Source of the DNA: Mytilus edulis
Taxonomy: Eukaryota
Direction: 5' to 3'
NCBI RefSeq assembly: GCF_963676685.1
Contig: NC_092356.1
Coordinates: 65,658,001-65,722,000, forward strand
DNA length: 64,000 nt
Numbering within the stretch: position 1 is the first letter of the stretch; each line of letters opens with the position of its first letter. A program made the translations under genes and the position numbers. A model generated the notes under the pieces. The model saw nothing but the letters and a program-made list of their open reading frames with translations. It had not been told where the DNA came from and did not search any database. Of the stretch, positions 3,065-63,292 are shown piece after piece.

Positions 3065-3445
3065 GTCGATACCTGTAACTTGGCATTGCACAAGGTCAAG
3101 TTTTTCTCTGACGGTTTATGACGTCTTTACACTAAATCCATTGGATGTTGGATGTGTACGGATTGATAATTTAGTCTTAGATACATGATTTTTCTATAAG
3201 TTGTTAGTGGCTTTGAACTAGCTGTCGAGTAACTGCGAGTACTCTCAGATATGTTCCTAGTGTCTTTTTGTTGTCGGGATGTACAAGTATCCGGCCACAT
3301 CCACTTGTATTTTTGTCCATCTGATGAGTTAAGCCTTTTTCAACTGATTTTTATAGTTCGTTCTTATGTTGTACTGTAATACCACTGTCCCAGGTTAGGG
3401 GAGGATTGGGATCCCCCTAACATGTTTAACCCCGCCACATTATTA
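3065..3445 (+). mobile_element. Family 1 retro-repeat (3' region of a Penelope-like element), 3'-truncated
   Basis: Matches other family 1 copies at about 22050-22290(+), 33624-34135(+), 35657-36045(-), 36103-36720(-), 41143-41350(-) and 55440-55720(+). Confidence 0.8.
3110..3176 (+). promoter_or_regulatory. Type II SECIS-like element in family 1 repeat
   Basis: AUGAC (3118) / UGAU (3164) core; 10-bp helix GUCUUUACAC/GUGUACGGAU with one mismatch; unpaired AAA; apical mini-stem UCCA/UGGA. Confidence 0.7.
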
Positions 3446-4748
3446 AGAAAATAGATTAAAAAGCTAGGTTGAAATTGCCTGCCTAATAAACTAAATGAAA
3501 CGTTTCCTTAATAAGAAAAGAGTGACCAATGTGAACTCATGGTTTGGTTCGTCTTAAAATACAGGTTGGAATCTAAGTACTAGAAAAAATATAAATATAT
3601 TTAATACCTTCTTAACATGCTTAATGTATTAACGCCTTTTCTATACACGGATGCATAGTCAAATCAATATCTTAAACATTACAAAAAAATCATATTGGTT
3701 AAAGTAGTATTGCCTATAGTTTGCTTCAACTTAGATGTATATAAACATAGGGTATTACATCTATGGTTTAAATGATCCATGCATGGGTTGTTTCTCTCTC
3801 AAAATATCACTATTCACCACACACTATAAAAAAAAAAAATTAACCGCGACCTGTTAAACAAAAATAGGTCAATTTATTTATAGAACTAGACTAAGTGTAT
3901 TTATTTTATATCGGATATTAAATATAGTTCTGGTTTGTAAGTATTTATGTCACATTATATTTATATATTTATTTTTGAATTACAAGTCATTTTAGATATG
4001 CAAATGTGCTATCGATGGACATAGGTTTTTTTGGCAGATGGTGTAGGTAACAAAGATCCGGCCCGCGACTAACTATAATTGTACAATCCATTGTACAGCA
4101 TTATTTACAATAATCATCCGAACAGAAGACACGTTAGCAAAAACTATTTTTAAAGGCAGTCAGGAATACAGATCCTTTTTGTACTTGCATTATGATAGGG
4201 TGTGTTAATATTACAGTAGATTAACCGCATGAGTTACAGGGCAAAATATACATTCATGAGGGTCTGGATGGAGTTTTCAGAGTAGAGAAAATGAACCCAC
4301 GTACCACCCCCCTCCCCGCCCAAATATATATAACAGACCGGCTGACATATTTCAAACATGCAAGTTTAGCATGTTTAGTACCTTGTGTTATATTAAAGTA
4401 TATAGGATTTTTTTCCAGGAACAAATACTTGTGCAGTGGAAAGAAAAATAATTGAATAATAAAATACTGATTACATTGATTGATTGGTTGGTGTTAAGCG
4501 ACACTTTAAGCATTATTGTGCTATTTCGTGGCGACTACTTTTTGTAACCTTGGATAGAACAAGCGACCTTTAGTGGGAAAACTCATATGCTAGTCAATTA
4601 AGATTGGGGTCAAGTCAGAACATATAGGAATGATGCGTTATATTTATTGTTCTTCATCAATTCATGCTGGTCAGTCTCCCTTAACGAAATCAATCTTCAT
4701 ATTGATGTTAATCGCACAATTGGTTTTTGCTATTTCAGACACCCAGGC

Positions 4749-7700
4749 ATGGATTCACACATTGTACTAGTGACCGGTGGCAGTGGTTTCCTTGGTCAGC
4801 ATGTTGTCAAACATTTAGATATGTTTTGTGATGATATAACGGAAATACGAGTCCTAGACATCAGACCGTATGAAAAGAATTTGGGTAACAAACGTTTTAA
4901 ATTTTATATTAAGTGTACTTGGCAGTCTCATTACCACACATTCATACACCTCTATTTCGAATTACATTTATTGCAATCAGTTGCTCATCACTTTGGACAG
5001 ATCCAAGCTAGACAATATGACAAGCTTTTCCATTTGCGGTCAATAAGTCTTCTTTTAAAACTTCCATTACAGAGCAGAAAATTTGTACAGTAAGATTAAC
5101 ACATTTCTCATTCAATATAATGGAAAGAATATTCTTTTTGCAGGCGTGCAAATTGTCTCAGATAACATCTTTTTCTTTGTTTACATAAAGTTGTTGGACG
5201 GCTTTGTTGTAGATTTTGAAGACAGAAAGCCAGTTACATCAATTATAGGAAATCTTACAGATCCGGATGTCGTCAGGAAAGCTTGTAAAAATGTTAAATG
5301 TGTCTTCCATATTGCTGCATTGGTGGAATATAAGTTGTTTCCAGATATCACAGCTTTAAATGAGATAAATATTCAGGGTATGTATAGTAGGTATTTACTA
5401 TATTTATGATAAATTAAATATAAATAATAGCGAATACGTTTTCCACAGTCTATTTTATCAGTAACGCGTGGATACATTTTCTAAGTTCTCAATAATTGAA
5501 TTTAATTCTGAGCCTTGAGGAACGTCGACTATGAAAGAAACGAATAGTGAATTTTGGGTGTTTTGGTGCGTTTTTTTTTTTATTAACCTACATTATGAAC
5601 GCTCAAACCTACACAATTGAAATCATGGAATGTATAAATACGTTTAACACGTCGCATATACATATACGACAAAAATAGCATCTTTAAGTGAAAAATATAA
5701 TATAATTACTTCTGGAAATTCATCAAGTACGCATCCTTGAATATGACTTGGTCTGCGCTCCTCGTTATAGTATTGTATAATTGTTTGGCATTGCCTTTAT
5801 CAGATTCCCTTCGACTTATGAACTTTTTTAATGTATCTTTGGTACAAAATGTATCTTCCGCCTCTTTATAGACATATTTAACCACATTAACTAATTATGT
5901 ACATGATGTATAGTATTGTTATTTGTTGTAATTTCACAATATTTTTAAGGTACCCTGAATGTAATTAATGCATGTAAAGAAGAAGGGGTCGAAAACCTGA
6001 TATACTGCGGAAGTATCTCGTCCTTTTTCGATGGGCACGAGGTATTCGAAGGAACAGAAGAAACTGTACCAATTGCAAAAAGTCCGCTAGGGGAATACGC
6101 TGTATCAAAAAAAGTTGCATTAGAAATGGTAATTAAGGAAAATGGAAGTGTTTTAGAAAACGGTTAGTCATACATTTAATTTCTATAAGTATGTAGAGGT
6201 TAAGATAAAACATTTAGTTCATTTTAAAGCAACTATATGCACAGGATTATTTTTTATACACAGTTTTGATTTAGAATAAAAACCGACATGGATAGAAACA
6301 ATAAAAAATAACACTATTACAAATACAATTCCACTATAATATTCTTGTCATGATTAGAAAAAAACACCAATGAATATAAAATGACATATTAAACTAATTT
6401 TAGTAGTATTAATTTTCTATGAATATAAGAAGTTCTTTCATCATTGAAAACTATCCACCGAAGACGAAGGAGACACGGTGAAGGAGATCATGTACGGTGT
6501 TGTACAAAAAAAAAGAAGTTTAGTATTGAAGCTCTTACAGGCTCTGAAATTCCAAAATATGAAACTATTCAAAATAGGAGAACTCGTACATGTAGTAACT
6601 AAACAACGTTTAAAGACAAAATAGCGTAATATTTCATGATAATGTAACACAATCAACGACATTATATACATTTGTACTTGGGCTCTACGCATTTGTTTTT
6701 AGTTTCATTTCAATCAGCATGTCAATAATAAATAGTACATGTATGTTTATAGAAAGTGTTGTTATTTCTATAAATATTCTTGCCTTTTAGAGACAAAACC
6801 AGAAGTATAAAAGTATTGATTTATTGTTGGTAGCTTAACGTCCAATAGTAAACATTTCAAACATATTTAGGACGATAACAAATTTACAATAAATACAATA
6901 GGTAGGTCCTGAATTAGAGGACGTCTGGGATGCATGAAAGTCGGAGTATTGGGACAGCCGCTGTCAAATGAAGGGTATATTGGATAGGGACAAAAATGTT
7001 GACTGGCATCAGCCTGGTCACCTTTGGACACCTCAAAGAATTTTTTCAATGCATTATAATAGCTGAGACCGTGGCAGCTACACGAGAAGTGGATAAAACG
7101 TCCCGACCCCCTTCTGATCAGACGTGGCTATTGTACAGCCTGCACAACCAACGTACTCCTCATTTTAGCCAGGGTTTTACTGTCGGTCGTAAAAAGACCA
7201 AGAGTGACAATATTTCTATTCCCATATCTATTTATTCGGAGAAATCTGATGTTGTTTTTTATTAATTGTTTTTTTTGTGTGTGTGTGGGGGGGGGGGGGG
7301 GGGGGGTAAAATTCTAATTCAAATCGGGTTTGGCTTTACTTTTGATCCTTTTTATAAGGTCGTCGACGTTTGAACAAGTTTTGAACTCAGTTTTGGCCTT
7401 TCAAATGTTTCGGCTTCCAGTTTCGATGAAAAGACGTTTATTATCGAAATGCTCATCTGGTAATAAAATTGGTATAAATTGGTATACAAGTAGTTCCAAA
7501 TTCCAAATATTATTGATATATTTTTTTTTCTAGAAGAAATCAGATATTAGTGTTGTCTGTTTTACTGTACATTTTTTTATTGTGCTTCTGTCATCCTTCT
7601 TAATTTTTAATGCATTATTTTATAGGAAAATTTTTCCAGACAACAGCTGTATTACCTACATCTATGTACGGAGAAGAAGACCGGAGGCGATTAGAAGTGG

Positions 7701-8182
7701 CATCGTTCTATAAAGAAGGAACTGTGTCTAGGGTAGTCGGGAAAACAACAGCATTGTTACCTCTTGTTTACGTAGGCAATGTGGCAATGATGTTTGTAAA
7801 GGTCTATGAAAGGATGGGTAGAGATAATGGTATTGGCGGCCATTATTTTTTCACTGTTGACGACACTCCCCCTCAAAATGCTTTTGAGTCTGGCCACATG
7901 TACATACCGAAAGCAAATGTCAACATAACTTTGTCCTGGTGGTATATACCAATGTTTGTAACCATGGCAATGGTTACATTGTTGTATTACATTCTCTTAC
8001 CAATAAGACCATTTTATAAAGTAAATTTGCCTATATCGAACTGGATTATTTTACATATGAATAAAACTTGCCTTTACAAGAATGATAAAGCTAAGAAAAT
8101 GCTCGGATATGAACCTCTATATGACTATGAAACAGCACTGAAGAAGACAAAGGCGTTTTTTGGTACTGTCAGACAAACATGA
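4749..8182 (+). CDS. 3-beta-hydroxysteroid dehydrogenase/isomerase-like extended SDR, 356 aa, 4 coding exons
   Basis: Exons 4749-4884, 5213-5377, 5950-6162 and 7626-8182 join in frame across GT-AG phase-1 introns (1071 nt). Motifs: VLVTGGSGFLG (NAD binding), VFHIAA, NIQGTLNVINAC, catalytic YAVSK, PTSMYGEED, VYVGNVA, a hydrophobic membrane segment, and KAKKMLGYEP. Confidence 0.93.
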
Positions 8183-10945: not shown

Positions 10946-11264
10946 GTTTCGTCCCCGAGGGTATCACCAGCCCAGAAGTCAGCACTTCGGTGTTGACATG
11001 AATATCAATTATGTGGTCATTTTTATAAATTTCCTGTTCACAAAACTTTGAAATTTATGAAAAACTAAGGATTTTCTTATCCCAGGCATAGATTACCTTA
11101 GCCGTATTTGGCACAACTTTTTGGAATTTTGGATCTTCAATGCTCTTCAACTTTGTATTTGTTTGGTTTATAACTATTTTGATATGAGCGTCACTGATGA
11201 GTCTTATGAAGACGAAACGCACGTCTGGCGTACTAAATTATAACCCTGGTACCTTTGATAACTA
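10946..11264 (+). mobile_element. 5'-truncated hammerhead retrozyme (family A) inserted in the minisatellite
   Basis: Reverse complement of the 355-bp unit at 26219-27111; hammerhead at 11188-11231. Confidence 0.9.
11188..11231 (+). ncRNA. Minimal type I hammerhead ribozyme (stem III palindrome mutated)
   Basis: gcguca CUGAUGA gucu uauga agac GAA acgc acgu C uggcgu; predicted cut after GUC at 11225. Confidence 0.8.
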
Positions 11265-23242: not shown

Positions 23243-25281
23243 CGGGGACGAACGATGCCAGACGGACGTTCAAACTCATAGATAGAAAATAAACTGAAAA
23301 TGACATGGCTAAAAAGAAAAAGACAAATAGACAAATAACTGTACACAAGACACAACATAGAAAACTAAAGACTAAGCAACACGAACCCCACCAAAAAGGG
23401 GGGTGATCTCTGGTGCTCCGGAAGGGCAGGCAGATCCTGCTCCATATGTGGCACCCGTTGTGTTGCTCATGTTATTACAAACCTGGTAAATAGTCTAATT
23501 AGGTAGATCACATTCGTAAAAAGGGAACGGAGTTGTAGTTTCGACATAAGGAACTTATGCGATACCATCTGTGAAACGGATATTCCATAGCGGTCAACCA
23601 ACTCGTGATGGCGTCCGTAAAATTTACGAAGTGATGATTTCACCTTCACCATTTGGAACTCTTGGTTTAATAGCTTCTTTGTGAGCAGCAACCCTCTATT
23701 AGGGGAAGATCCGGGTCTTCATCTTTGGTTGAAATTCCAAAGGAACTTATATAGAATCGACCAATGATTATCCAGAATTTCCTCTTTGATTAGTGTCGTG
23801 GCGGTATATGTTGAGTTTCCAAGTGAATTCTCAATACATAATTCATTTATCTAACACTTTATGAAATGAGATTTACACACAAAAACGATGTTGTTTGGGA
23901 CTTTATCTGCGGGGACAACGATATGTTTGTCAAGGAGGTAGGACAAGTGTTTTGCAACATTCGGGTCTCTAAAGATTGACGTAGCATGGTCTTGATAGAC
24001 TAATTCAGTTGCTTAATTCTGATTTGTATCAACGACCTTATAGCCTTAATCCATTTTACGTCTTGGCATGATCATCGACTTAATCCATAGGTATTTTGAA
24101 GCTGTGTTTCCAATTGATGGATTTAGGCTCTGGATATTTCGGACCTTTGGATAACACATTTCGCAGGGATGTGTTATGAAAAATGTTGAGGCCAGCCGAA
24201 TTATATGTGATTTGGAAAATAGCACAAGTTCAATCAGGAGGCTTAAATTGAGAAAGGAAATAAGGAATATGTCAAAGAAACAACAACCCGACTATGGACC
24301 AGATAAGACCACAAATGAGTCTTTAACGCAGAGAAAATCCCCCACCCGGAGGTGGTCCTCAGCTGGCTCTTAAATGAAATTGTGTACTAGTTCAGTGAAA
24401 ATGGACATCACACTAAACTCCAAAAATATAAATGAACTAAAATAAAAAAATAAAAACATACAAGACTAACAAAGGCCAGAGGCTCCTGACAGGCGCAATA
24501 TTGGGATCCCGCATAACGTGTTTGTAATTGAAATTGTTAGTTGCAATTGGTTTAGTATACGATTAAGAACTGATTGGTACAGACCGATCTTTAAAATGTG
24601 GAGGTGTTTTCAATTGCACTAATTCGTGATGAAGGATATTGCCCAAGTTGACGCCTTCAAGATTTTTGTTGGCAAAGGATATTTAAGAACATATCTTTTC
24701 TTTTTTTTCATCTTTTCTAAGACGAACTGGTTTAAAAGGTCTGTGACTTGCAATATCAGAAATGATAGCTGTACGTTTGTTTTGGTTTGAATGAAGTTTG
24801 TAACAGTGTTTTCCAAAGATAAATTAAACAAAGAATGAAGGTTTTTTTTAAAGGGGTAATGTATAAAGTTTCGTGAGAATGTGATGAATAACTAACAGCT
24901 CTTGTATAAATGGCAACAAGTCATTAATAGATACATCAAGGAGAGTTTGTGATGGATAATGCCGATGACCATGACTGCGACGAAGTCGAAGAGTAGAGTT
25001 GAAAATATTCATCTCATTCACCGAGCTACAAGGAAAACTAGATACATTACCTGTGCCATCAATTTTGTCATTGCAACCATATAGTGTCCATTTCCCAATT
25101 GTCGAATTCAGTAGTCCCCTTTTTGTCTACGGAGGGGCGTTAATTGCAAGATGAGGATTGTAAGTCCTGTGGTACTGGTATATTTTTCGATAATGCGAAC
25201 TTTTATAGAAACGATTGAATGATCGGACTGATTTAAATGCAGGTAAAGAATGTCGCTTACATTGTGGTTGATATCTGATCT
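23243..25281 (-). mobile_element. Decayed, internally deleted Penelope-like retroelement with the endonuclease upstream of the RT (Naiad-type)
   Basis: Minus-strand order: GIY-YIG C-terminal-like HLNQSDHSIVSIKVRIIEK..RRQKGDY (25281-25100), then RT N-region IVVPADKVPNNIVFVCK..KEEILDNH (24000-23740), then RT C-terminus LLTKKLLNQ..SSLRKFYGRHHELVDRYG (23690-23580), then 3' tail. A family 2 copy is nested at about 24245-24505. The element splits the 3' flank of pseudogene 2. Confidence 0.75.
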
Positions 25282-26218: not shown

Positions 26219-27111
26219 TAGTTATCAAAAGTACCAGGATTATAATTTTATACGCCAGACGCGCGTTTCGTTTACATAAGACTCATCAGTGACGCTCAGA
26301 TCAAAATAGTTAAAAAGCCAAATAAATACAAAGTTGAAGAGCATTGAGGATCAAAAATTCCTAAAAGTTGTGCCAAATATGGCTAAGGTAATCTACTCCT
26401 GGGGTAAGAAAATCCTTAGTTTTTCGAAAAATTCAAAGTTTTGTAAACAGAAAATTTATAAAAATGACCATATAATTGATATTCATGTCAACACCAAAGT
26501 GCTGACTACTGGGCTGGTGATACCCTCGGGGACGAAACGTCCACCAGCAGTGGCATCGACCCAGTGGTGTAAATAGTTATCAAAAGTACCAGGATTATAA
26601 TTTTATACGCCAAACGCGCGTTTCGTCTACATAAGACTCATCAGTGACGCTCAGATCAAAATAGTTAAAAAGCCAAATAAATACAAAGTTGAAGAGCATT
26701 GAGGATCAAAAATTTCTAAAAGTTGTGCCAAATATGGCTAAGGTAATCTACTCCTGGGGTAAGAAAATCCTTAGTTTTTCGAAAAATTCAAAGTTTTGTA
26801 AACAGAAAATTTATAAAAATGACCATATAATTGATATTCATGTCAACACCAAAGTGCTGACTACTGGGCTGGTGATACCCTCGGGGACGAAACGTCCACC
26901 AGCAGTGGCATCGACCCAGTGGTGTAAATAGTTATCAAAAGTACCAGGATTATAATTTTATACGCCAGACGCGCGTTTCGTCTACATAAGACTCATCAGT
27001 GACGCTCAGATCAAAATAGTTAACAAGCCAAATAAATACAAAGTTGAAGAGCATTGAGGATCAAAAATTCCTAAAAGTTGTGCCAAATATGGCTAAGGTA
27101 ATCTACTCCTG
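26219..27111 (-). mobile_element. Tandem array (2.5 x 355 bp) of hammerhead retrozyme family A
   Basis: Near-identical 355-bp units, with one hammerhead per unit on the minus strand at 26252-26295, 26607-26650 and 26962-27005. Confidence 0.93.
26962..27005 (-). ncRNA. Minimal type I hammerhead ribozyme, intact
   Basis: gcguca CUGAUGA gucu uaugu agac GAA acgc gcgu C uggcgu: complete core and palindromic stem III. The copy at 26252 has a stem II mismatch; the copy at 26607 has a GUU triplet. Confidence 0.92.
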
Positions 27112-32647: not shown

Positions 32648-35600
32648 TCAAATTGTCTGCTTGCAGTCGGTTTTGTTCACACTTATTTTATCACTTATAT
32701 TTTTTTCAGGAATTAAACTTCCGTTTTGTAAAGACTTCATTGTATCTCCAACCAGTCCAAATTCATGGTTTTCTAGATTGCTCCTCAGGCTTTCTGTACT
32801 CTCTGAATTTCTACCTGAAAGAACAAAAAATATTGAATGATTAAACCAAAACTGTTTTATTTTATTTTTAAAGTTACGTTTTTTATATATAATTATGTTT
32901 AGAGACAATTTATGGCGATAACTGCATAAAGTATTTATTTCGGTTATCTATTAGTAAGCATAACAGCCATTCCTTTCAATCAATATATGTATATTAGACT
33001 CCCCATCAAACCGACTTAAACACATAGAAAAACAATTAATTTTATCAAGTTCGTTGTTTGGTGTAACGAAGAAGTGAACGATCCAATTTTTTTCAGCTTT
33101 TTTTTTTTTTAACAAAATCTACTAGTTCTAATTTTTAACATGCATAATTATATTTTCCCCAGGAACGCAAATAGGAAACTGTGTATTCTCAATGTATCAT
33201 TCTGAAAGATGAGGCTAAAGTTAAGCTGTAATATTTAATTTAAATCTTATTCAACGCTCCCATATATTTTATGTAACTAAAGTTTTATATAAAAAATGTG
33301 AATAACATTTAAATAAAATAGAAATATGCCACCCACTATTGATATTACTCAAGAGTACATGTAATAAAAAAATATCTATATTGAAGCCTACAACTGAATG
33401 ATTTTTATTAAATGCTTAAAACAAAGTAAGCATACCTGCTGATTCATATCCGCTCGACTGTTCATCTGAAACTACAAATTAGTTAACATTATACATTTGA
33501 TTCAATACATAATTGCGGTTTTAATTTTCACTCGTTTTTTTCAGAAAATAAGAAGACGTGATATAATAATAAATTAGACAACTAATCACTATACACCATG
33601 TAAGTGATGTAAGTAAGTACATAAGCTGTCAGATAACTGCGAGTACTCTCAGATCTGTTCATTGTGTCTTTTTGTGTTGGGATGTATAAGTACCGGGCCA
33701 CGTCCACTTGTATATTTGTCCATCTGATGAGTTAAGCCATTTTCAATTGATTTTTATACTTCGTTCTTATGTTGTACTGTTATACCACTGTCCCAGGTTA
33801 GGGGAGGGTTGGGATCCCGCTAACATGTTTAACCCCGCCACATTATTTATGTATGTGCCTGTCCCAAGTCAGGAGCCTGTAATTCAGTGGTTGTCGTTTG
33901 TTTATGTGTTACATATTTGTTTTTCGTTCTTTTTTTACATAAATAAGGCCGTTAGTTTTCTCGTTTGAATTGTTTTACATTGTCATTTCGGGGCCTTTTA
34001 AAGCTGACTATGCGGTATGGGCTTTGCTCATTGTTGAAGGCCGTACGGTGACCTATAGGTGTTAATGTCTGTGTCATTTTGGTCTTTTGTGGATAGTTGT
34101 CTCATTGGCAATAATATCACATCTTCTTTTTTATATAAAATAATAATTGAGAATGGAAAAAGGGATTGTGTCAAAGCGCCAACAACCCCGACCATAGAGC
34201 AGATAACAGTCGAAGGCCACCAATGTATAGATTAACATTAAACTGATAATAGAGCATTTGCATTTTTCACGTATCTGGATACGTTCGTAGATAAACGTAT
34301 ACGTATCGGCCAGGTTTATAAAATATAATATTAAACTCCGACCTCAATTAAAACTACATTAAAATTAAATGCATTTATATAAAATATGTTAATCGCGACC
34401 CACTTGTCTCAATTTAGCCTTTCCTCATATACGTGATATAGACGATACGTCGATACGGATACGCCAGCAAATACACGAATAGTGTAAATGTTCTAATTAG
34501 AACAACCAACTACAGAACAGACAACACCACGAGCAGTAAGCTATAGGTGAGGCTTGTTTAGGGGGGGTATCAATATCCCATATCCCATTAAGTTTTTATC
34601 CCAATATCCCGTATCGCTATAATGTTTACCCCTAATATCCCAATAAATATTTTTTACAAATATCCCATATCCCTAAAACTATTTTGAAATATCCCAAAAA
34701 ATCATTACAAATTCATTCCCAAGCCCGTTTTTTTCCTCATCATCACAGCGTCAACAATTTTGACTGGTAAAACAAACTGTGTTAAAGGAAATTTACAGTG
34801 CATACTTCCAGTGTTAAATAAGAATATATGTGTCCAAAAGATGAAGTGTTCCATCTTAGAGCCTTGTATAACAATCTCTTTTTATGTGATCTTAAACGAT
34901 GAATTTAGTGTAAGAGGTCTAATTTCAGACTTTTTTTTTAATTGTTCAAACCGTGATGCATATGACTGTACAATTTCATTTTGATAGCATTCTTCCCTCA
35001 TTGATAAGAAACTTCATCCTACACGTTAACCTATGCTGGAAAGAACAGAAGGACTCAACCCTGTCTCTTGTCCGAGATTGCTCTGACATTCAACGGCTGT
35101 TTTGCCAGACAAGCTGAGACAGTGGGACGTCAGAGCACGTCCATATCAAAAAGTGGATATTTAGCATGCAAGTTCAAGAACTCAAAATTTAACATAAGAA
35201 AGCTTTCTGCTTATGTACCTACATTACACTTAACTGTTGCAATATTTTTACAGCAGGCAAAATTTGCACAAGAAATAATACAACATTTGACTCTGTGATC
35301 TTGAACTTTATGAATTACATAGATCCTAATATTTTTGTTACTTTTTTTTAATTTCCTTCCTCACAACACCAGTAATAGAAAGAGCATATATTAATTTACA
35401 TTGATTATTTAGTAATTATTCGTTTTTAACATAGTTTATACGGCGAAATATCTACTTTTTGATATGAGACGTGCTCTGACGTCCCTCGGCCCTAGCTTGT
35501 CTGGCAAAACAGCCGTTGCACATCAGAGCAATCTGTGAAACGTGAAGACCTCTGAAGATCCTCGCCACGTAAAAAATAAGAGGTAAAACACTAAAAAAAT

Positions 35601-38600
35601 ATCCTGTAATCATATAAAGCATAAAAAAAAATAAAAACATTGACAACAATAAGGCTTATAAAAAAGAAGATGTGGTATGATTGCCAATGAGACAAATATC
35701 CACAAAAGACCAAAATGACACAGACATTAACAACTATAGGTCACCGTACGGCCTTCTCCAATGAGCAAAGCCCATACCGCAAAGTCAGCTATAAAAGGCC
35801 CCGATAAGACAATGTAAAACAATTCTAACGAGAAAACTAACGGCCTTATTTATGTGAAACAAAAAATGAACGAAAAACAAATATGTAACACATAAACCAA
35901 CGAAAACCACTGAATTACAGGCTCCTGACTTTGGACAGGCACATATATACATAAATAATGTGGCGGGGTTAAACATGTTAGCGGGATCCCAACCCTCCCC
36001 CTAACCTGGGACAGTGGTATAAAAGTAACTCATCAGATGGATACATCCAACAAAAATCTATGATTATTTCAAGAAAATTATCAATGCATATGAGCATATC
36101 ATATAAAAAAAGATGTGGTATGATTGCCAATGAGACAACTCTTCACAAGAGACCATGTGACACAGAAATTAACAATTATAGGTCACCGTACGACCTTCAA
36201 CAATGAGTAAAGCTCACACCGCATAGTTAGCTATAAAAGGTCCTGAAATGACAAATGTAGAACAATTCAAACGAGAAAACTAACGGCCTAATTTATGTAT
36301 AAAAAAATGAACAAAAAACAAATATGTAACACAGCAACAAACGACAACCACTGAATTAAAGACTCCTGACTTTGGAAAGACACATACATACAGAATGTGG
36401 CCAGGTTAAACATGTTAGCGGGATCCCAACCCTCCCCTTAACCCGGGACAGTGGTGTAACAGTACAACATAAGAACGAACTATACAAATCAGTTGAAAAA
36501 GGCTTAACTCATCAGATGGATACAAATAGAAATACATCTAACAAAAACAGAGAGTGGACGTGACCGAGTACTTGTACATCCCATCAACAAAAAGACACTA
36601 AGTACAGATCTGATCTAGTACTCGCAGTTACTGACAGCTAGTTCAAAGCCAATTACAAGTAATAAACAGTAATGCATCTGAGACTAAATTATCAATCATT
36701 ACACATCTAGCATCCAATGGCACGGTAAACAACATCTCCGTAAAAATGAGGATGTGCTATCCCGTTTGAAATAAGTTTTCTACAGGTAGAACCTAACTTC
36801 AAAACCAAATCTATAATTTAGTAAAGATTTTAAGTGATTTATGGTAACGAAATTCCTGACTTAATAATTTACCAGTATCACATAGATTTCGTTCATTAAA
36901 ATACAACAGACACGGGCATAGCGGAGGAGTTGTGATATACAAACACCGTATGTTAGTGTCAATTAAAGGAACATCACCATCCAAAAAAGGAAGTATGGAA
37001 AGCAAAACAAATACTTTTAAAATTATCAGTACATATGAGCATATAAATATCGAAAATAGATCAATACTTTTCGCTTGGGTTTGGATGACTTTTAAATAAA
37101 ACGACCATAAACTCAATTAAAATCAACAAAGCACTAAAAGGACCTTTAATATTAAACTTTTTTGGGCAAATTTATCAAGTGAGATGTAAATATTTCTGTA
37201 CTTAACTTTTAAATTCCAATTATTTTTTTTCATGTTAAAAATTCAATATCCTTATAAATGCATCAATATCCCATATCCCATTTACAATTAGGACAAATAT
37301 CCCATATCCCTAAAATTAAAATGGCAAATATCCCGTATCCAAATATACCCTATACAAGCCTCATAGGTATACAAACAATTCACAATGACAGTAAAATTAT
37401 ATAGTAACAGCGCGTATGTATAAAACGTGTTTCAGACGTCACCGTCTACTCAACATTGTTTCAGACGAGATCGTCTACTTTACACTACTTCATTTTTAGC
37501 CATGGCGTTGTCAGTTTGTTTTAGATTTATGAGTTTGACTGTCCCTTTGGTATCTTTCGTCCCTCTTACACGTGTTTCAGACGAGATCGTCTACTCTACA
37601 CGTGTTACATAAAATCTATTTAATATTGCTAAAACCAATTTATTTAAAATTTAAAATTATTAAAATTATTTTCCATAAAGCTTACCTATATAATTACCGA
37701 TTCCATCCTCCGAAACTTGTGTAATTGGAGTTGATTTATGTTCGGAAAGTTGTGTAGGTCGAGGATTTTGGCATTCAAGTAATCTGTCTTCATTTTTATC
37801 ACAAATGTGTGCTAAATCGGAACTTACATTATGACCCAATGAAAAGTCAGTGCTATGTTTTCTTTGGTGGTCTTCTGGATATTCTTCTTGAGATAATTCC
37901 AGTGAACTAATGTTATTGTTATTTCGGCTTTCTAGTACGAAATTAGTTTTACTCGTCGATGTATTAACACAAGATTCGTCGTCAGAAGTTTGATTAACTT
38001 TTTCATTATTTATAATTTTCGTAATGATCTTTGGTAAAGCATCTGCATTTTTAATTTCAATGCTTTTTAATTTGTTTGCGCATCTGTCCTCGGGTATTGA
38101 AGATTTTTCCATTTCGTTAGAATTCTTCACAGGAGCATCATGTTCTTTTTTAATTATACTTTCAACCTTAGGTACACTATGAATGAGGTCTTTTGCCAAG
38201 TTTGCGTTCCGCAAGTTATTTTGTAAATTGCCTTTCGCTTCAGCATAGTGTCCATTTGTTCCGTTATTTTGTTGATGGTCAAGAAGTCGACCCTCTTCAG
38301 CTTTATCAGCACCTAAAGAGAAATGATATGGTATTTCAGTATTATGATTTAATCTTTACAAAAGTGCAGCAACAACGCATAATGAAAGATACTGGTATTG
38401 TCGAATCAAACTCTACATTTTAGTCTTCTGTAAAAGTGTTGTCCGTATTCTATTGTCTAACAATTCTAGTATAACAAAAGTAATAATTTCTTAATCTCAC
38501 CGTCATTCTTTTGTCTTGTGTACTTCAGAAGTATACCTGCAATCAGAATGATTCCCACAACTACCATTAGTACCAAAACTATTACACTGAAAATATAATA

Positions 38601-53375: not shown

Positions 53376-56351
53376 GTACCAAGCTCTCATTCACCAGAAT
53401 CTACCATCAATATCAAGTATTCAAAAAGAACAAATAAAAAACAAAAACCTTTAGATAAAGACATTCATTGACAAGTGAGGTTCCTTACAGGTAAACGAAT
53501 AAACAACTGGAAATATTATGTTTTCGTATCTCAACCTTTCCTCATTTATTCATTTGCAAAAGATACATTAAAAAATGCACGATTAAAATTTGTACAGAGA
53601 CAAAAAAAAAAAAAAAAAAAATAAAGATCCTATTTAGCTTTGCTTGTATTTGTTTTGTTAATCTGCTGCGTTTTCAGTAAATTGTTTACTTAAACATTTT
53701 CGAAGCATATCAGTAACTAAGATAGGATAAACAGCCAGAACACATTATTCCTTTCTTTATCGTGTTTGTTTGTGTGCTTAAAAAAGATTTTGTGTTCATG
53801 AATATAAAATGTTTTTGTTTCAAGTACCTAAGACCAACTTAGGACACATCTTATTCTTAAGTGGGTTTATCAAACATGTCTCAACTTCGGAAAATCATAG
53901 GAATTGTCCTAACTTTAGGATACCAGTTTAGGTGTCATAGGATGTTCCGAACTTTAGGATACCAATTGAGGTGTCTTAAGATGGTCTTAGGGTGGTCCTA
54001 ACTTAAGGATATATTTGAATTTCGTCTTTTTTTCATTTTCACACGTATTAGTTTTTAAGCAGTAGTAAAATAGTTGGAATTCTCCGTATTTTTATGAAAA
54101 ATGTACGAGATTTGCCTTTCAACTATTAAAGAATAAAACCGTGACACTCCGAATTCAACTCACGCAAAAACATGATTTTTACCGATTATATAGTTTACAA
54201 TTGGTTTGTTATTTTTTTTATATAATACGTAGTTATCATTTTTGTCTTCTGTTTTGTTTTATATTTCTTCTCCGCCAATACTTAGGAAATTGGTTAGGAC
54301 GTCCTAGCTAAGATAATCCTAAGATAGCTTCGATGTGCTGATTTTGTTTAATGTGTGTGAAGTAATTTTGTTTTCATGAACGTGACATTACTTTGTTTCA
54401 TGAACCTGAAATGATTTTGTTTCATGTGCATGGAGTGATATTTTTCCATGGACCGATACATCGTTTCTATATTGATGTTGATATTTTGACTACGTGAACA
54501 ATATATATATATATATATATATATTTAAACAGTATATATACTATAGTGACATCCTGTAATACGATGCATACAATAGCCTATAAATATAAGCTTAACTAAT
54601 TCAAATGTTTATACAACAAAAGATTTAAATATCTATGTAATGTCAGAACCGGATACAAGGTTATAAGATAAAATTCTGTCCTATATTTGACAATACATTT
54701 TCCATTGAGTTGGAGCGACTTATGCATGACGAAACATTGTATATTTACTGAAGCTGTCATAACATACATAACAGGAAGGAAAAAAACACTGAGTTTGTTT
54801 TGAAATTATTGATTAACCTTTAAATGATACAGTGTACATGGTGTAATACACTAACGACATCAATTAAAAAAAATTTTTATGCTTACTATCGTTGTAATAG
54901 CATGGAAGTATACAATCATCCAATGTGCTTGGATTAGGGAACTAAAGGAAGAGTTGGTGCCTTCTAACGTTTAACCTTCAAGTGTGACACATTCGGTACG
55001 TGCCAAGTCAGGCGCCTGTAGTTCCGTGGTTGTCGTTATTTGCTATGTTGCATATTTGTTTTTCATACATTATTTTGTACATCGGTTAGGGCGTTGGTTC
55101 TATTGTTTGAATTGTTTTGCATTTCTCATTTCGGGGATGTTTAAACGGGTAAACCAACGGTCTAATGTATATAAAAAACGAGAAACACTGATGAACAACA
55201 TTAACAGACGACAAATACTGAACATCAAATTGCACATACATTTATGACAGTGACTTATAGTTATCCCTATGACTTGTTGTCACTCTTTCCCTATAGAAAT
55301 TGTACAACAACTCGAGTTTGATCTGAAGAAATTCATAAGAATTAAAAAAAAATATGGTTTCTCAAAGAAATAAACATAATAGTTATAGAAAACGAGTCAT
55401 TATCATGATGCATGGACTTTTCGTAGGCTCGGTTATTATTCTTTCTTATGTTGTACTGTTATAATCCTGGTACTTTTGATAACTAATTATACCACTCTCC
55501 CAGGTTAGGGGGAGGGTTGGGATCCCGCTAACATGTTTAACCCCGCCACATTATTTATGTATGTGTCTGTACCAAGTCAGGAGCCAATTCAGTGGTTGTC
55601 GTTTGTTTATGTGTTACATATTTGTTTTTCGTTCATTTTTTTAACATAAATAAGGCCGGTAGTTTTCTCGTTTGAATTGTTTTACATTGTCTTATCGGGG
55701 CCTATTATAGCCGACTAGGGTAATCGTATCGTGAAACACGAAGTTCAAAGTTTAAAATCATGCACAATTTATTTATATACGAGTTAATAACCGATGGTGC
55801 GTTTCATTTCATGTCCATTTTCATGTAAAATAATGAGCACAAAGCGAAATCCGAACTTTATTATGCTAGGATGAAGATAGGATGATCTTAAGACACCTTA
55901 TTGGGTGTCCTAAAGTTAGGACGAAAAATGAGACATATCAAAAGTTAAGAGAGCTGCGAGAACACGACTTATGACAAAGACTTGACATAAGATAGACTTA
56001 GGACACGTCCTAATCCTAAGATAGCTTCGAGAACACCACCCCTGATTTGCAATGACGAATAGTGCGCCAGTGAACTTGTGGTTATTCTCATATCAAATAG
56101 AAACTCGAAATAGCCTGTGTCGCTTACTTAGGTCTATGAGTATATTTAACAAAGGACACTTTCTAACACTGTAGACAATCACGGGAATATTATTCATAAC
56201 AAAAAACCTTCTTTGTTGATCTTGTATTACTGATCCTTTTTCTGTTTATTTTATCTCTATATTCTTCAGTTTTGGCTCAAAACACTAAAGCGGGTAACAC
56301 AATTGTCATTTAATGACAATCACTCATATAAAGACGACAGTTTACTAAGTA

Positions 56352-56640
56352 AAAAGGAAAATCACAAAAATACTGAACTCTGAGGAAAAATCAAATCAGA
56401 AAGTCCCTAATCAAATGGCAAAATCAAAGGATGAAACACATCAAACGAATGGACAACAACTGTCACATTCCTGACTTGGTATAGGCATTTTCAAATATAG
56501 AAAATGGTGGATTAAACCTGATTTTATAGCACTAAACCTCTCACTTGTATGATAGTCGCATCAAATTCCGTTATATTTACAACGATGCGTGAACAAAACA
56601 GACAAAATAGGTAAAATAGTCAAATATGGGAACAGCAGTC
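56352..56640 (-). mobile_element. Family 4 retro-repeat with twister-like fold at 56461-56554
   Basis: Minus strand reads ucaua caaguga GAGGU..UAA UCC AC C auuuuc..gaaaau G CCUA UACCAAGU CAGG AA uguga. T1 is ACC/GGU and T2 is AC/GU; this copy has one P4 mismatch. Confidence 0.75.
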
Positions 56641-57574: not shown

Positions 57575-58376
57575 GACTACCAAAATGTCAGTATGCACCT
57601 CACCTCAGAAGCTAAAAAAACCTTTAAATAGTCTTCTAAGAAGGGATATAGTTACGATACTGTTGTCAGGTCATTAAAGATTGCATATTTTGGCGTTAAT
57701 ATTGATTCACTTATAGGGTCTTTGCGTCGGAACTAAACACATTTATTTAAAAACCAGTTGTTGGCATGACACGGGTGATGTTCTTCTCATATATGTTATG
57801 ATGGTGTGATACTTAACCCCTCACGGGAAGGATTGTGCCTGATATTCATATGATGAAGACATAATCTTTCAATCAGTTTAATTGAAGTCTGGAGCTGGCA
57901 TGTCAGTTAACTGCTATTAGTCTGATGTAATTCATGTATTATTGTCATTTTGTTTATTTTCTTTGGTTACATCTTCTGACATCAGACTCGGACTTCTCTT
58001 GAACTGAATTTTAATATGCGTATTGTTATGCGTTTACTTTTCTGAATTGGCTAGAGTTATAGGGGGAGGGTTGAGATCTCATAAACATGTTTAACCCTGC
58101 CTCATTTTTGCGCCTGTCCCAAATTAGGAGCCTCTGGCCTTTGTTAGTCTTGTTTTATTTTTAATTTTAGTTACTTGTGTACAATTTGGAGTTTAGTATG
58201 GCGTTCATTATCACTGAACTAGTATATATATTTGTTTAGGGGCCAGCTGAAGGACGCCTCCGGGTGCGGGAATTTCTCGCTGCATTGAAGACCTGTTGGT
58301 GACCTTCTGCTGTTGTCTTCTCTATGGTCGGGTTGTTGTCTCTTTGACACATTCCCCATTTCCATTCTCAATTTTA
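57575..58376 (+). mobile_element. 5'-truncated Penelope-like element, family 2: ORF end, SECIS, twister fold, 3' module
   Basis: Frame reads ..PLNSLLRRDIV / KGYSYDTVVRSLKIAYFGVNIDSLIGSLRRN* across a frameshift, with the stop near 57736. SECIS at 57780-57860; decayed twister at 58050-58139; the tail matches many short copies in the window. Confidence 0.7.
57780..57860 (+). promoter_or_regulatory. Type II SECIS element
   Basis: Helix I ucauau/auauga; AUGAU (57798) / UGAU (57840) core; helix II GGUGUGAUACUU/AAGGAUUGUGCC; unpaired AA; mini-stem CCC/GGG; lies about 60 nt after the ORF stop. Confidence 0.8.
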
Positions 58377-60367: not shown

Positions 60368-61902
60368 TAGTGGAGCGGCGGAGCAGACAATTTCAGAAAT
60401 TTAAATTACCTAAATACCTCATGGACTTTTAATAGCTCGTTGGAAAGCTGAAATCGTGTACTTTTTGAAAATATGTGTCGTCAATATGAAAGCTGGTACC
60501 ATTATGCCGAAAATCAAGGTCAAAGGTCATCACTTAAAAAATCCTATTTTCATCTCGAGAAACAATACCATTGATATTTTTCAAAATTAATAATCTATTC
60601 AATAAATTAAATGAGTATTACTATGTATCAATGTGTTAGTTCATACAACTTTGTTTTTTTATTTGGACTTGACGTCAAAAGAACGTTATATTTAACTTTT
60701 TTGAAGGTAGTCCGTGGTATACAAATTTTAAAGGGTGATCATAATTTCCAGGCACCAAAGAATTAGAGAAATCGTAATTTATATCTGGTGTTTCCTTTTC
60801 AGCTGAAGAACATGCTACTGCTTTTAAATTATGTTTACTTGTGTAGCTTTTAAAACATGATCTATGGTACCTAAATACGGGTAATTTACTAGATATTTCA
60901 TTGCAGAACTCATAAAAAAAACTGAACAAATCATCACGTCTCTTTGCTGCAGCATTTATCAGGCTTTTTCTTCCAGATTCCGTTGATGTTATCAAATTTT
61001 CATCATCAACAGAATTGCAGATAATGCAATTGTCAACACCAACTTCCACTCTCCTTTTTTTTTTTGGCATTCGGAGGGACTAGTTTTAATGAGACTGATA
61101 AATTGTCCATTTGATGAAATAAGAAACAAATCAAACACACCTGAAAACCAAACAAACCCTACAATGATATTCACTTTTCCCGTTGAAATCAACAAAATCT
61201 AATACACAACAATACCAAACAATATAAATTAATCACAAAGCTTCGGAAATTACAAAATGAACAAGAAATATGCTTGAAAACGACTACAATCAACCTTCGA
61301 AAAATTGCTGAATGTTGGACTATAAATAGAAACCACAACAATGTCGGTAAATTTGAGACAAATATTCGGACTTCAAATCTCAATAAAAAGCCGATATTTA
61401 GCCAAATATTTATCTTATAAAGAATTTACTGCAAAAAGTAAATCGAGTCGATTGAAGTATTATACGACGGCTTTATTGTTGTGCCTTTAAAATACAACTA
61501 TACTGCACGTGCAAATAATGCTAGGTGAAAAACGATGATTTTTCACTGTTATTTTCAACCATTTTCAGATGCATTGTGCTCTCCATATAGGACTTTTTAA
61601 AAATGCTCTTGTATGAAGTTCAAGAATAACTATATTTACCAATTTCGTTCACAAATTATTTTTTAGAACGTGTTTGATATGAAATATGAGTACCGAATCA
61701 GCAGTGGGGTATACGATGCAAGTTGGGTAACGTCAGTTAAGGCTTTTTTTAACGTCATTTGTAACACATTTTATTTTGACGACAAACATTTTTCAGAAGT
61801 TGAATAATCGATAGACATTTTAAGCCATTAAAATCCCATGAGGTATTTAGGTAATTTAAACTCGTTAACTAAGCGACTTTTTTAACTTTCGCCGCTCCAC
61901 TA
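60368..61902 (-). mobile_element. Internally deleted Academ-like DNA transposon inserted in the Polinton protease
   Basis: TIR TAGTGGAGCGGCG plus subterminal inverted ttaaattacctaaatacctcatgg; 3-bp TSD AAT (60365-60367 and 61903-61905); TAG ends and a 3-bp TSD fit Academ. Confidence 0.8.
60675..61070 (-). pseudogene. Truncated N-terminus of the transposon protein (NLS, CxxC...YHxxC zinc-binding motif)
   Basis: MPKKKRR..CIIC..G.KSL..AA..R.D..YHRSCFKSYT; no catalytic domain follows. Confidence 0.6.
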
Positions 61903-63136
61903 AATACAAGCCACAGGTATTTGAATCATTGGGTTGAATTTGATTGCCAATCACACAGTATTCCGGTCCATTCACGATGAGTACATTTCTAAAATAGCGT
62001 TGGTACGTTTCCGGGTATCGACCTAAGGAGTCGAAAAATTCGGGTGGACCCGATGCGGGAAAATAAAAAGCCACCCAATGACTCCCCTTTTGGTCACAGT
62101 TGTCCGTATTGACTACAAACGTTCTAGGCCTGTCGCTCACATAGCTAGGCAAGTCTTCTGCACAGCACACGGTCACGGGCAATCCGCTCAAAGCATCCTC
62201 TACATCTTTCCCGGTCATCGGAAGAGCAATGCCGTTTTTCTTCCCACACCCTTGCTGACTATGGGTTTCCAATCCGCGAAGGTGAGCAAACACTACTCCA
62301 CAATCCCGACAGGCGATGAGATCTTCTCGTCTTTCAGCATCGTCCGACGATACGTCTGTTGTCTCGTCGGCCATGTCTTCGTCTGACGAGACCGAACTTT
62401 CGTCTTCGGAGAGATGGGGGTCCTCCTTCTTTTCATCATGTGTCTCTCCTTGACCGATCTGCAAGACCTCTGTGCGTAATCTGGAGGCTTCCGGGGTTTT
62501 AGCTTTTAGGTCAACCAGAAGGTACCCGAAAGGTGTCCTCGTTGCCTCTTCGAATTTCCGGAGAAAGAAGTCCCCTCGAGAAGGATACATCTGTCGGCCC
62601 AGCGTCATGATGGGTTGACGATCAATGGGGTTATTAAAGAGAACGAGATAATGACAGTTTCGTCTCTGGGTGGGGTCTTTGCCAAAGTATAAATTCTGAT
62701 TCAAAACGACGACCGATAAATTTCTATGGTGACTCCCTTCCGTAAACAAATCATTTATTCTGGAGTCTTTGGCCGAGGTCGACATGAGATCATCTAATAG
62801 GATCATGTTTCGAATGTTGGGATCGAAAAAATCGTCCCTTTCGAGATCAAAAGGAATTCCACGAATGAATTCAACGCGTGGAAGCACTGTTCGTTGTAAT
62901 TCCTTGTAAAGAGGTTGCCACCTTTTATACAACCAAACAATTCTTTCTGGACTGGGACTACACAGTCTTTTTATGTGTTGAAGCACATCTTTCATAAAAT
63001 GAGTTTTTCCGCAGGAGGTGGGACCGGACACGATCATGGTAAAAGGGTGGCTAAACACGAAAGTCTCCTGTTGCTGCTGCTGCTGCTGCTTTTGCTGCTG
63101 TTGTTGCTGTTGCTGCTGTTGCTGCTGCTGTTGCTT

Positions 63137-63182
<46 letters not shown>

Positions 63183-63292
63183 GGTACATCTGGGTGGTAT
63201 AGTGGCTCATCGGAAGAATGCTTACTTCTCATATGTCTTTGAAGATCGTGCGGCCACACATATACTTTACGGCAAATATTGCAATTAAACAT
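61865..63292 (-). CDS. Polinton fusion ORF: C2H2 finger, polyQ, A32/FtsK-like packaging ATPase, acidic linker, second Zn finger, adenain-like protease (C-terminus disrupted)
   Basis: CNIC..H..H; Walker A GPTSCGKT; Walker B ILLDD; FTEGSHHRNLSVVVLNQN; CRDC..H...C; protease NTD..GSHW, FFDSLG, Q...TCGLY. The last 12 aa derive from the inserted transposon. Confidence 0.9.

What the first reader, a model, noticed from the sequence alone, without database searches (positions are those of the whole stretch)
33794..33879. P3-type twister ribozymes hidden in four abundant mussel repeat families, with covariation in both pseudoknots
Seen: four repeat families that differ in sequence share one motif order: [P3]-P2'-GA-xxx ... 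U^AA-P2-T2-P5 hairpin-CCUG-UxxxAAGU-CAGG-A-[P3']. Pseudoknot T1 covaries: CCC/GGG (family 1 at 33794 and family 2 at 58050), CCU/AGG (family 3 at 2553 and 43190), ACC/GGU (family 4 at 56461). T2 is GC/GU or AC/GU. The pair closing P5 is C-G or U-A, and P2, P3 and P5 change sequence while keeping pairing. Known: this maps onto the twister consensus (cleavage at U^A, general-base G before the conserved A, L4 UCCCAAGC in the rice example), and P1-less mini-twisters can cleave. Penelope-like elements are normally associated with hammerheads. Inference: these are 3' or pLTR modules of Penelope-like elements that use a permuted twister instead, and their short copies amount to 'twister retrozymes'. 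I do not recall this being described in bivalves but cannot check. Caveat: a canonical P1 stem is missing.
Basis: partly seen in the sequence, partly recalled or inferred. Interest (0 to 1): 0.92.

Follow-up and report, generated by a model that had tools for sequence, protein, structure and literature searches.

The report
Permuted twister ribozyme fold in Naiad retroelements
A very abundant mussel repeat carries a rearranged copy of the twister self-cutting RNA fold in the tail of Naiad-type Penelope-like jumping genes, a group described as lacking ribozymes; cutting itself has not been shown.

Summary
It has the twister core in the order P5-P2'-GA-GGG-linker-U^AA-P2-GC-P3-P4-L4-P4'-A-P5'. 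That topology is type P5, not type P3.

An exact core pattern occurs 20,355 times in this genome and never in the reversed control. My covariance model finds 12 copies in the window.

Rfam's Twister-P5 model aligns end to end with a sister copy, but only at 23 bits against a cut-off of 37.6. No copy reaches a gathering score.

P3 and P5 differ in sequence between lineages and still pair. T1 takes three matched forms: CCC/GGG, CCU/AGG and ACC/GGU. T2 varies on one side only, P4 never varies, and P2 fails in family 4.

P1 is missing. Its 21-nt place holds two palindromes that change sequence yet stay self-complementary, which suggests pairing between two copies.

The module lies about 280-300 nt before the 3' end of Naiad-type Penelope-like elements. 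This is shown for families 1, 2 and 3 and for several foreign lineages, but not for family 4.

RNA reads show transcription but no pile-up of ends at 33830/33831, so cleavage is unproven. The scan has noted this motif before, elsewhere in this genome. I found no paper that links twister with Naiads.

The parts
33624..34136 (+). 5'-truncated copy of a Naiad-type 3' tail (family 1) that carries the motif. The 3' end is the same in all copies; the 5' ends vary.
   Evidence: Self-BLAST of the window. A longer copy at 36990-36101(-) runs upstream into RT C-terminal remnants.
33784..33797 (+). P5, 5' strand: outer arm 33784-33790 and inner arm 33794-33797
   Evidence: Pairs with 33885-33891 and 33876-33879. 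P5 has a different sequence in each lineage.
33801..33808 (+). P2 3' strand (G run), GA, and T1 3' strand GGG (33806-33808). This copy lacks one G of the run.
   Evidence: 118 of 360 reads insert a G after 33800.
33809..33829 (+). 21-nt linker in the place of P1, holding palindrome 1 (33811-33818) and palindrome 2 (33822-33829)
   Evidence: No hairpin is predicted (0 to -2.6 kcal/mol), but a homodimer duplex is. The Rfam Twister-P5 model has a 20-nt P1 hairpin at this place.
33830..33838 (+). U^AA with the predicted scissile bond at 33830|33831, P2 5' strand CCCC (33833-33836), and L2 GC (33837-33838, T2)
33839..33857 (+).
   Evidence: All four modelled pairs show compensatory changes across lineages.
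33858..33874 (+). P4 (CCUG/CAGG), the 8-nt loop L4 (T1 CCC 33863-33865; T2 GU 33868-33869), and the conserved A at 33874
   Evidence: Rfam twister-P1 partial match at 33839-33874, 16.5 bits. The same P4/L4 letters occur in an Rfam-certified type-P3 twister in L063.
33876..33891 (+). P5, 3' strand (33876-33879 and 33885-33891)
58057..58129 (+). Family 2 copy. It lies in a 5'-truncated Naiad, after an ORF-end remnant at 57644-57733 and a SECIS-like stretch at 57788-57852.
   Evidence: R1 74.9 bits; tblastn; SECIS_1 24.6 bits
2559..2632 (-). Family 3 copy (T1 CCU/AGG)
   Evidence: R1 67.5 bits
43196..43269 (-). Family 3 copy, partly decayed
   Evidence: R1 61.4 bits
56469..56549 (-). Family 4 copy (T1 ACC/GGU; P2 does not fit the canonical register)
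   Evidence: R1 63.1 bits
35923..36006 (-). Family 1 copy, the second unit of a partial tandem
   Evidence: R1 78.3 bits
36364..36443 (-). Family 1 copy, decayed, preceded by RT and C-terminal remnants at 36990-36710(-)
55503..55582 (+). Family 1 copy
   Evidence: R1 77.3 bits
31135..31215 (-). Family 4 variant with T1 AUU/GAU and C in place of U at the cleavage site
   Evidence: R1 49.5 bits

Best explanation
The stretch is a dead, 5'-truncated copy of the 3' tail of a Naiad-type Penelope-like retrotransposon. The tail holds a circularly permuted (type-P5) member of the twister ribozyme class.

Shown: the twister core letters and helices P2, P3, P4 and P5 and pseudoknots T1 and T2 are present. 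P3, P5 and T1 are kept through changes of sequence between lineages. The module sits about 280-300 nt before the 3' end of Naiad units, and it recurs in the upstream truncated copy that forms the pseudo-LTR.

Inferred: in a transcript running through a tandem or pseudo-LTR arrangement, cleavage at U^A in both copies would release a unit-length RNA with 5'-OH and 2',3'-cyclic phosphate ends. This is the role proposed for hammerheads in other Penelope-like elements.

Also inferred: P1 is replaced by two palindromes, so the active form may need two copies to pair. Lone copies scattered in host transcripts would then stay uncut.
For: Abundance and core:
- The core pattern has 20,355 exact matches and 0 in the control.
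- Rfam Twister-P5 aligns over all 58 model positions to L031:5584-5650 (23.1 bits, E 0.0037 on 146 nt), with a 21-nt insert where the model has a 20-nt P1.
- L113 scores 19.4 bits with the same model.
- The same P4/L4 letters occur in an Rfam-certified twister in L063 (58.7 bits).

Pairing, on 78 distinct rows:
- 85.9% of cells pair against 78.3+-0.6 in shuffles (0 of 500 reach it) and 30-46% when partners are slid.
- T1 pairs are GC 49 / AU 8, GC 57, and GC 33 / UA 15 / GU 4. T1 was not part of the model that made the alignment.
- All four P3 pairs show compensatory changes.

P5 and the linker:
- Each lineage has its own 7-12 bp P5 helix; the cognate mean is 7.5 against 6.4+-0.16 for non-cognate pairings.
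- Both palindromes are present in 54% of rows against 8+-3% of shuffled linkers, with at least 9 different perfect forms of palindrome 1.
- The linker is predicted to dimerise at -12.5 to -20.5 kcal/mol in 9 of 10 lineages and has no hairpin.

Naiad host:
- Element anatomy.
- More than 100 near-identical RT copies in the genome.
- Naiads are reported to lack canonical hammerheads (PMC8557442).
- Penelope-like hammerheads are thought to act as dimers in tandems (PMC6765202).
- Twisters without P1 can still cleave, inefficiently (PMC8501958).
Against: - No Rfam gathering hit in the window or the genome. The best twister scores are 16-23 bits.
- P1 is absent.
- P4 is invariant and T2 varies on one side only, so neither shows two-sided covariation.
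- P2 fails in the ACC-type families (72% paired overall).
- In an unbiased mutual-information ranking, the proposed T1 partners rank only 3rd of 70 columns, because family-specific columns co-vary by descent. The independent compensatory events are few, about 3-4.
- RNAalifold without constraints recovers only P4. The MFE z-score is -0.93.
- Raw RNA reads cover the repeat on both strands, but no place shows many molecules beginning or ending, so there is no sign of cleavage at 33830/33831.
Confidence: 0.6

Rival explanations
1. A twister-derived relic. The fold descends from a twister but no longer cleaves, and it is kept in Naiad tails for another role: recognition by the element's reverse transcriptase, or RNA dimerisation through the palindromes.
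For: P1 is lost and its place holds palindromes. No read ends pile up at the predicted site. Rfam scores are below threshold. P2 is weak in abundant family 4.
Against: The catalytic-core letters are kept across lineages whose RTs are only 38-70% identical, while the rest of the tails no longer aligns. These letters are UAA, GA before T1, AAG in L4 and the A after P4. A mere binding site would not need both pseudoknots.
Confidence: 0.22
2. One reading: the short copies are 'twister retrozymes', non-autonomous elements that spread through small circular RNAs cut out by two twisters.
For: Partial tandems of tails exist, for example 36639-36101 and 36027-35657 on the minus strand with two motifs about 440 nt apart. 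Contigs of other runs show 'goes back' joints of about 435-470 nt.
Against: The copies share one 3' end and have variable 5' ends, as expected of 5'-truncated insertions of the autonomous element (PMC8557442). No cleaved or circular RNA signal was seen. The joints are equally explained by tandem DNA.
Confidence: 0.1
3. Chance resemblance: an ordinary conserved repeat domain that merely looks like a twister.
For: No Rfam gathering hit. Covariation statistics are confounded by descent.
Against: There is an end-to-end alignment to the Rfam type-P5 model. All core letters are in the right order. Three matched T1 forms sit exactly where the model predicts. P5 and P3 are kept by different sequences.
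Confidence: 0.05

Closest known systems
Type-P5 twister ribozyme (Rfam RF02684, clan CL00120)
   Same: Same order of elements, open at P5. Same core letters: GAGGG, UAA, GC, the L4 loop with CCCAAG, and the A after P4. Both pseudoknots are possible. The model aligns over all 58 positions.
   Different: The P1 hairpin is replaced by an unpaired 21-nt linker with two palindromes. A P3 hairpin is inserted. L4 ends in U, not C. The score is below the gathering cut-off. The host is an animal retroelement, not the mostly bacterial seed set.
Twister variants at the 5' end of Perere-3 (RTE) retrotransposons in Schistosoma mansoni (PMC8501958)
   Same: A twister-class motif carried by a retrotransposon in thousands of copies. 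P1 is weak or dispensable. The proposed role is cutting the element RNA out of a longer transcript.
   Different: Those are type P1, at the 5' end of an APE-type LINE, with P1 partly made from the target-site duplication. Here the motif is type P5, in the 3' tail or pseudo-LTR of a GIY-YIG Penelope-like element.
Hammerhead ribozymes in the pseudo-LTRs of Penelope-like elements (PMC4209133, PMC6765202)
   Same: Same position in the element, the repeated tail. The element has the same tandem layout. The closing helix is weak and the motif is proposed to act as a dimer of two copies.
   Different: A different ribozyme class. Naiads were reported to lack canonical hammerheads (PMC8557442).
Metazoan non-LTR retrozymes (PMC7229834)
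   Same: Short, abundant, ribozyme-bearing repeats in the same genus. A hammerhead array of this kind lies in this window at 26252-27005.
   Different: Retrozymes are tandem units bounded by hammerheads and yield circular RNAs. The twister copies here are dispersed 5'-truncated tails, and no circles were seen.

Membership tests
Twister ribozyme class | Reaches the Rfam gathering score of a twister model | tested here: not met
   0 gathering hits in the window and the genome. Best scores: 23.1 bits for Twister-P5 (cut-off 37.6), 19.4 and 20.3 bits, and 16.5 bits at the finding itself.
Twister ribozyme class | U-A cleavage step within UAA, directly 5' of P2 | tested here: met
   33830-33832 followed by CCCC. 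The column is invariant or nearly so in 23 representatives.
Twister ribozyme class | P4 closing an 8-nt loop with xCCCAAGy, followed by a conserved A | tested here: met
   33858-33874. P4 is 97.7% paired but never varies. An Rfam-certified twister in L063 has identical letters.
Twister ribozyme class | Pseudoknot T1 between L4 and the GA-GGG strand | tested here: met
   80.6% of cells are paired. Matched forms: GGG/CCC 20, GGU/ACC 10, AGG/CCU 7, GGG/UCC 3, GAU/AUU 1. Caveat: the partner columns rank 3rd of 70 by mutual information.
Twister ribozyme class | Pseudoknot T2 between L2 (GC/AC) and the last two letters of L4 | tested here: met
   94.2% paired, as GU 45 / AU 27 and CG 71. The change is on one side only.
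Twister ribozyme class | P2 helix | tested here: inconclusive
   4 of 4 pairs in families 1-3 (GGGG/CCCC, GGGA/UCCC), but 2 of 4 in family 4 and its relatives. 71.9% paired overall.
Twister ribozyme class | P1 helix flanking the cleavage site | tested here: not met
   The 21-nt linker folds at 0 to -2.6 kcal/mol. Published work says P1 is not strictly needed (PMC8501958).
Twister ribozyme class | Site-specific self-cleavage | tested here: inconclusive
   Raw RNA reads show no place where molecules begin or end. That was one run, 6% read, and the reads come from many decayed copies.
Type P5 rather than type P3 topology | The RNA ends lie between P4'-A and P2', not between L2 and P4 | tested here: met
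   Compare the layout of the Rfam type-P3 alignment with the type-P5 alignment. The lineage-specific long helix joins the two outer flanks.
Naiad clade of Penelope-like elements (PMC8557442) | N-terminal GIY-YIG endonuclease, KR-rich block, CxC and GxKF/Y motifs, DKA in place of DKG, and a C-terminal RT | tested here: met
   All were read in L031:2517-5252. Pfam is weak (RVT_1 E 0.16). Atlas neighbours carry RVT_1, HTH_animal and DUF8422. The insertion-in-fingers domain was not examined.
Naiad clade of Penelope-like elements (PMC8557442) | Unit of 3.4-4.4 kb with a pseudo-LTR made by an upstream truncated copy, and no canonical hammerhead | tested here: met
   The unit is 3968 bp. 1371-1927 matches 5338-5895 at 98.4%. 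Rfam finds no hammerhead inside the unit.
Naiad clade of Penelope-like elements (PMC8557442) | Selenoprotein coding in bivalve lineages (in-frame UGA plus SECIS) | tested here: met
   In-frame TGA at L031:2535-2537 and 3811-3813. SECIS_1 scores 41.4 bits, above its cut-off of 35, at 5310-5374.
Retrozyme | Short tandem units bounded by ribozymes that give circular RNA | tested here: not met
   Copies are dispersed and 5'-truncated. No circular or cleaved signal was seen.

The most novel reading that the evidence does not exclude
Naiad Penelope-like elements did not lose their ribozyme; they use a different one. It would be a P1-less twister that becomes active only when two copies pair through two co-evolving palindromes. 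That would be the first obligate-dimer twister, and a second ribozyme class recruited to the same step of the Penelope-like life cycle.
Probability: 0.4. Interest if true: 0.85.

Novelty: new variant of a known kind. Interest (0 to 1): 0.78.

Why it matters
Naiads are among the most abundant retroelements of bivalves and other marine invertebrates. Their lack of a hammerhead was taken as a sign that ribozymes may be dispensable passengers of Penelope-like elements (PMC8557442). A conserved twister in the same position would reverse that reading: self-cleavage would be a general requirement, met by two unrelated ribozyme classes.

It would also add tens of thousands of animal twisters that the current Rfam models miss. 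It would give a natural twister without P1, possibly dimer-dependent, that can be tested directly at the bench.

Tried and rejected
- My first idea was an RTE- or SINE-borne twister, as in Schistosoma (PMC8501958; PMC7761336). I dropped it because the ORF upstream is a GIY-YIG plus RT Penelope-like ORF, not an APE-type LINE.
- Rfam gathering searches of the window and genome gave nothing.
- Unconstrained RNAalifold recovered only P4. Single-sequence MFE was uninformative, as expected for a double pseudoknot.
- RNA reads give no support for cleavage.
- Mutual-information ranking did not single out the T1 partners.
- No ORF link was found for family 4 or for the 'J' group of foreign copies.
I therefore could not fetch the 6201 RT homologues found to test other phyla.
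- A scan of viral contigs returned only 7 stretches, on IMG/VR viral contigs, which I did not examine further.
- A paper on mollusc SINE domains (PMC4758252) was checked. The passages I read concern other SINE domains (MESC, Snail, V and Nin-DC) and show no link to this motif.

Full report
**1. Is it there?**

The sequence at 33784-33891 reads, 5' to 3':
- an outer helix strand
- UUA
- a G run, then GA-GGG
- a 21-nt linker
- U^AA-CCCC-GC
- a hairpin
- CCUG, an 8-nt loop UCCCAAGU, CAGG, then A
- the other strand of the outer helix

The 16-mer of P4 plus loop occurs 15 times in the window with up to 3 mismatches, against 0.18 expected. An exact, family-neutral core pattern occurs 20,355 times in the 1.37-Gb genome and never in the reversed control.

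I built a covariance model, R1, from 23 representatives using only P2, P3 and P4. It finds 12 copies in the window at E below 1e-4.

**2. Is it a twister, and of which type?**

Rfam gives no gathering hit in the window or the genome. The finding itself gets only a partial twister-P1 match covering P3-P4-L4 (16.5 bits).

On a cleaner sister copy, Rfam's Twister-P5 model aligns over all 58 positions (L031:5584-5650, 23.1 bits, E 0.0037 on 146 nt). In that alignment P2', GAGGG, UAA, P2, GC and P4/L4 are all in register, and a 21-nt insert sits where the model has a 20-nt P1 hairpin. A foreign copy, L113, scores 19.4 bits with the same model.

A bacterial contig picked up by the same pattern, L063, has three Rfam-certified type-P3 twisters. 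One of them has the same CCUG/loop/CAGG-A letters. Its alignment shows that in type P3 the ends lie between L2 and P4.

In the mussel motif the ends lie between P4'-A and P2'. The topology is therefore type P5.

**3. Pairing across lineages**

A metagenome scan added copies from other organisms. R1 aligned 97 copies, 78 of them distinct. I added T1 and T2, which were not in the model, and counted pairs.

Overall, 85.9% of cells pair. Shuffles give 78.3+-0.6, and none of 500 reach the observed value. Slid partners give 30-46%.

| Element | Result |
|---|---|
| T1 | GC 49 / AU 8; GC 57; GC 33 / UA 15 / GU 4 |
| T2 | 94% paired, but only G or A opposite an invariant U |
| P3 | compensatory changes at all four pairs |
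| P4 | never varies |
| P2 | 72% paired |

The matched T1 forms are GGG/CCC (20 rows), GGU/ACC (10), AGG/CCU (7), GGG/UCC (3), GAU/AUU (1) and GGU/AUC (1).

P2 is perfect in families 1-3. In family 4 and its relatives only 2 of 4 positions pair in the canonical register; other registers are possible there but clash with T2.

P5 is a different 7-12 bp helix in each lineage. The cognate mean is 7.5, against 6.4+-0.16 for non-cognate flanks.

Two cautions apply. The rows are related by descent. In an unbiased mutual-information ranking, the predicted T1 partners come 3rd of 70 columns, because family-diagnostic columns co-vary too. I count only about 3-4 independent compensatory events in T1. Also, unconstrained RNAalifold recovers only P4.

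**4. The missing P1**

The 21-nt linker has no predicted structure of its own (0 to -2.6 kcal/mol). It holds two self-complementary boxes.

Box 1 appears in at least nine different perfect forms at the same place. Examples are GGGAUCCC, GAGAUCUC, GAGCGCUC, UGGAUCCA, UGGUACCA, UGGGCCCA, UAGCGCUA, GGCAUGCC and GGCGCGCC. Box 2 appears in forms such as AACAUGUU, AACUAGUU, AACGUU and AACCGGUU.

Both boxes are present in 54% of rows, against 8+-3% of shuffled linkers. The centre of box 1 stays palindromic as it changes, which a small hairpin would not require. Predicted homodimers are -12.5 to -20.5 kcal/mol in 9 of 10 lineages.

Pairing between two copies is therefore the simplest reading. It parallels the dimer model for Penelope-like hammerheads (PMC6765202). 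This is an inference, not a result.

**5. What carries it**

Upstream of family 2 copies I found RT ORFs. I then read a whole unit, L031:1928-5895, of 3968 bp. It holds:
- a GIY-YIG-like N-terminus
- a KR-rich block
- the CxC, GPKY and DKA motifs
- an RT with the YLDD box
- a stop at 5253-5255
- a SECIS element at 5310-5374 (41.4 bits, above its cut-off)
- two in-frame TGA codons
- the motif, with U5614|A5615 lying 281 nt before the unit's end

A truncated upstream copy at 1371-1927 is 98.4% identical to 5338-5895. It carries the motif again, 3968 nt upstream.

These are the diagnostic features of Naiads, including the selenoprotein habit of bivalve lineages (PMC8557442). The genome holds more than 100 near-identical RT copies.

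tblastn with the L031 protein pieces finds a Naiad-like ORF on the same strand, just upstream of the motif, in these places:
- L071 and L097 (family 3; RT 68-70% identical)
- L098 (84%)
- L115 (65-72%)
- L072 (38-49%; ACC-type motif)
- L081 (weak match)

In the window, RT and C-terminal remnants at 36990-36710(-) precede a family 1 copy. An ORF-end remnant at 57644-57733 precedes the SECIS-like stretch and the family 2 motif.

The copy at 33624-34136 is a 5'-truncated tail. All copies share its 3' end and differ at the 5' end. Between families 1 and 2, only the motif itself still aligns. I found no such ORF link for family 4.

**6. Does it cut?**

One raw-read RNA run was available; 6% of it was read, at 90% or higher identity. 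It covers the repeat on both strands. Depth rises from 114/78 before about 33810 to 660/367 after it, on both strands alike, which fits the greater number of short copies. No place shows many molecules beginning or ending. There is thus no support for cleavage.

This does not weigh heavily. Most reads must come from decayed copies inside host transcripts, and a dimer-dependent ribozyme would leave lone copies uncut.

**7. Known or new?**

The following are already known:
- twisters, including type P5
- twisters at the 5' ends of RTE elements (PMC8501958; PMC7761336 mentions unpublished work)
- hammerheads in Penelope-like elements

Naiads are described as lacking canonical hammerheads (PMC8557442). 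No paper in the library holds both 'Naiad' and 'twister', and none links twisters with bivalves.

The scan's own earlier notes had already read this motif, on other pieces of this genome, as a type-P5 twister in Naiad tails. That lead changed my first reading, and I re-derived each step here independently.

**Verdict**

This is a real, strongly conserved twister-class fold in Naiad tails, with an unusual P1 replacement.

Noticed in passing
window 26252-26295, 26607-26650, 26962-27005 (-) and 11188-11231 (+): Type I hammerhead motifs at 29-33 bits, just under the Rfam cut-off of 34. Three of them are spaced exactly 355 bp apart, like the known mussel hammerhead retrozymes. Hammerhead-bearing and twister-bearing elements thus coexist in one window.
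   Followed up: partly
L031:2535-2537, 3811-3813, 5310-5374; window 57788-57852: The family 2 Naiad has two in-frame TGA codons and a SECIS element above Rfam's cut-off in its 3' UTR. It is a selenoprotein-coding retrotransposon in a mussel. The window copy keeps a weaker SECIS-like stretch (24.6 bits).
   Followed up: partly
window 33787-33802 (also 3384-3399 and 36000-36015): In family 1, the stretch covering the P5 strand, the junction and the start of P2' is itself a 3-mismatch copy of the P4-L4 16-mer. It may be an old internal duplication or an alternative pairing partner. Unexplained.
   Followed up: no
window 33852-33895: 50 RNA reads from 26 start places, all with the first mate on +, jump back 44 nt (33895 to 33852). 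This suggests expressed family members with a 44-nt duplication of the P4-to-P5 part.
   Followed up: no
window 24494-25078 (-): A weak (29.5%) match to the Naiad linker region, just downstream of the hammerhead array on the same strand. It may be the remnant of a different Penelope-like element.
   Followed up: no
window 4647-5093 and 7610-8182 (+): Two ORF pieces match the 3-beta-hydroxysteroid dehydrogenase family (Pfam PF01073). They are probably exons of a host gene whose introns hold some of these repeats.
   Followed up: no
window 61865-63292 (-), 63023-63172: A 475-aa ORF with a C2H2 zinc finger and a long CTG/CAG repeat. The repeat causes a spurious isrG Rfam match.
   Followed up: no
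L031:6181-6224 (-): A type I hammerhead at the Rfam cut-off (34.5 bits) lies just outside the Naiad unit on the opposite strand. It belongs to a neighbouring element.
   Followed up: no
L063 (metagenome contig), 1403-1469, 4085-4152, 4896-4966 (-): Three canonical type-P3 twisters (58-62 bits) lie within 3.6 kb of one contig, probably bacterial or phage. They were useful as a positive control for the core letters.
   Followed up: partly
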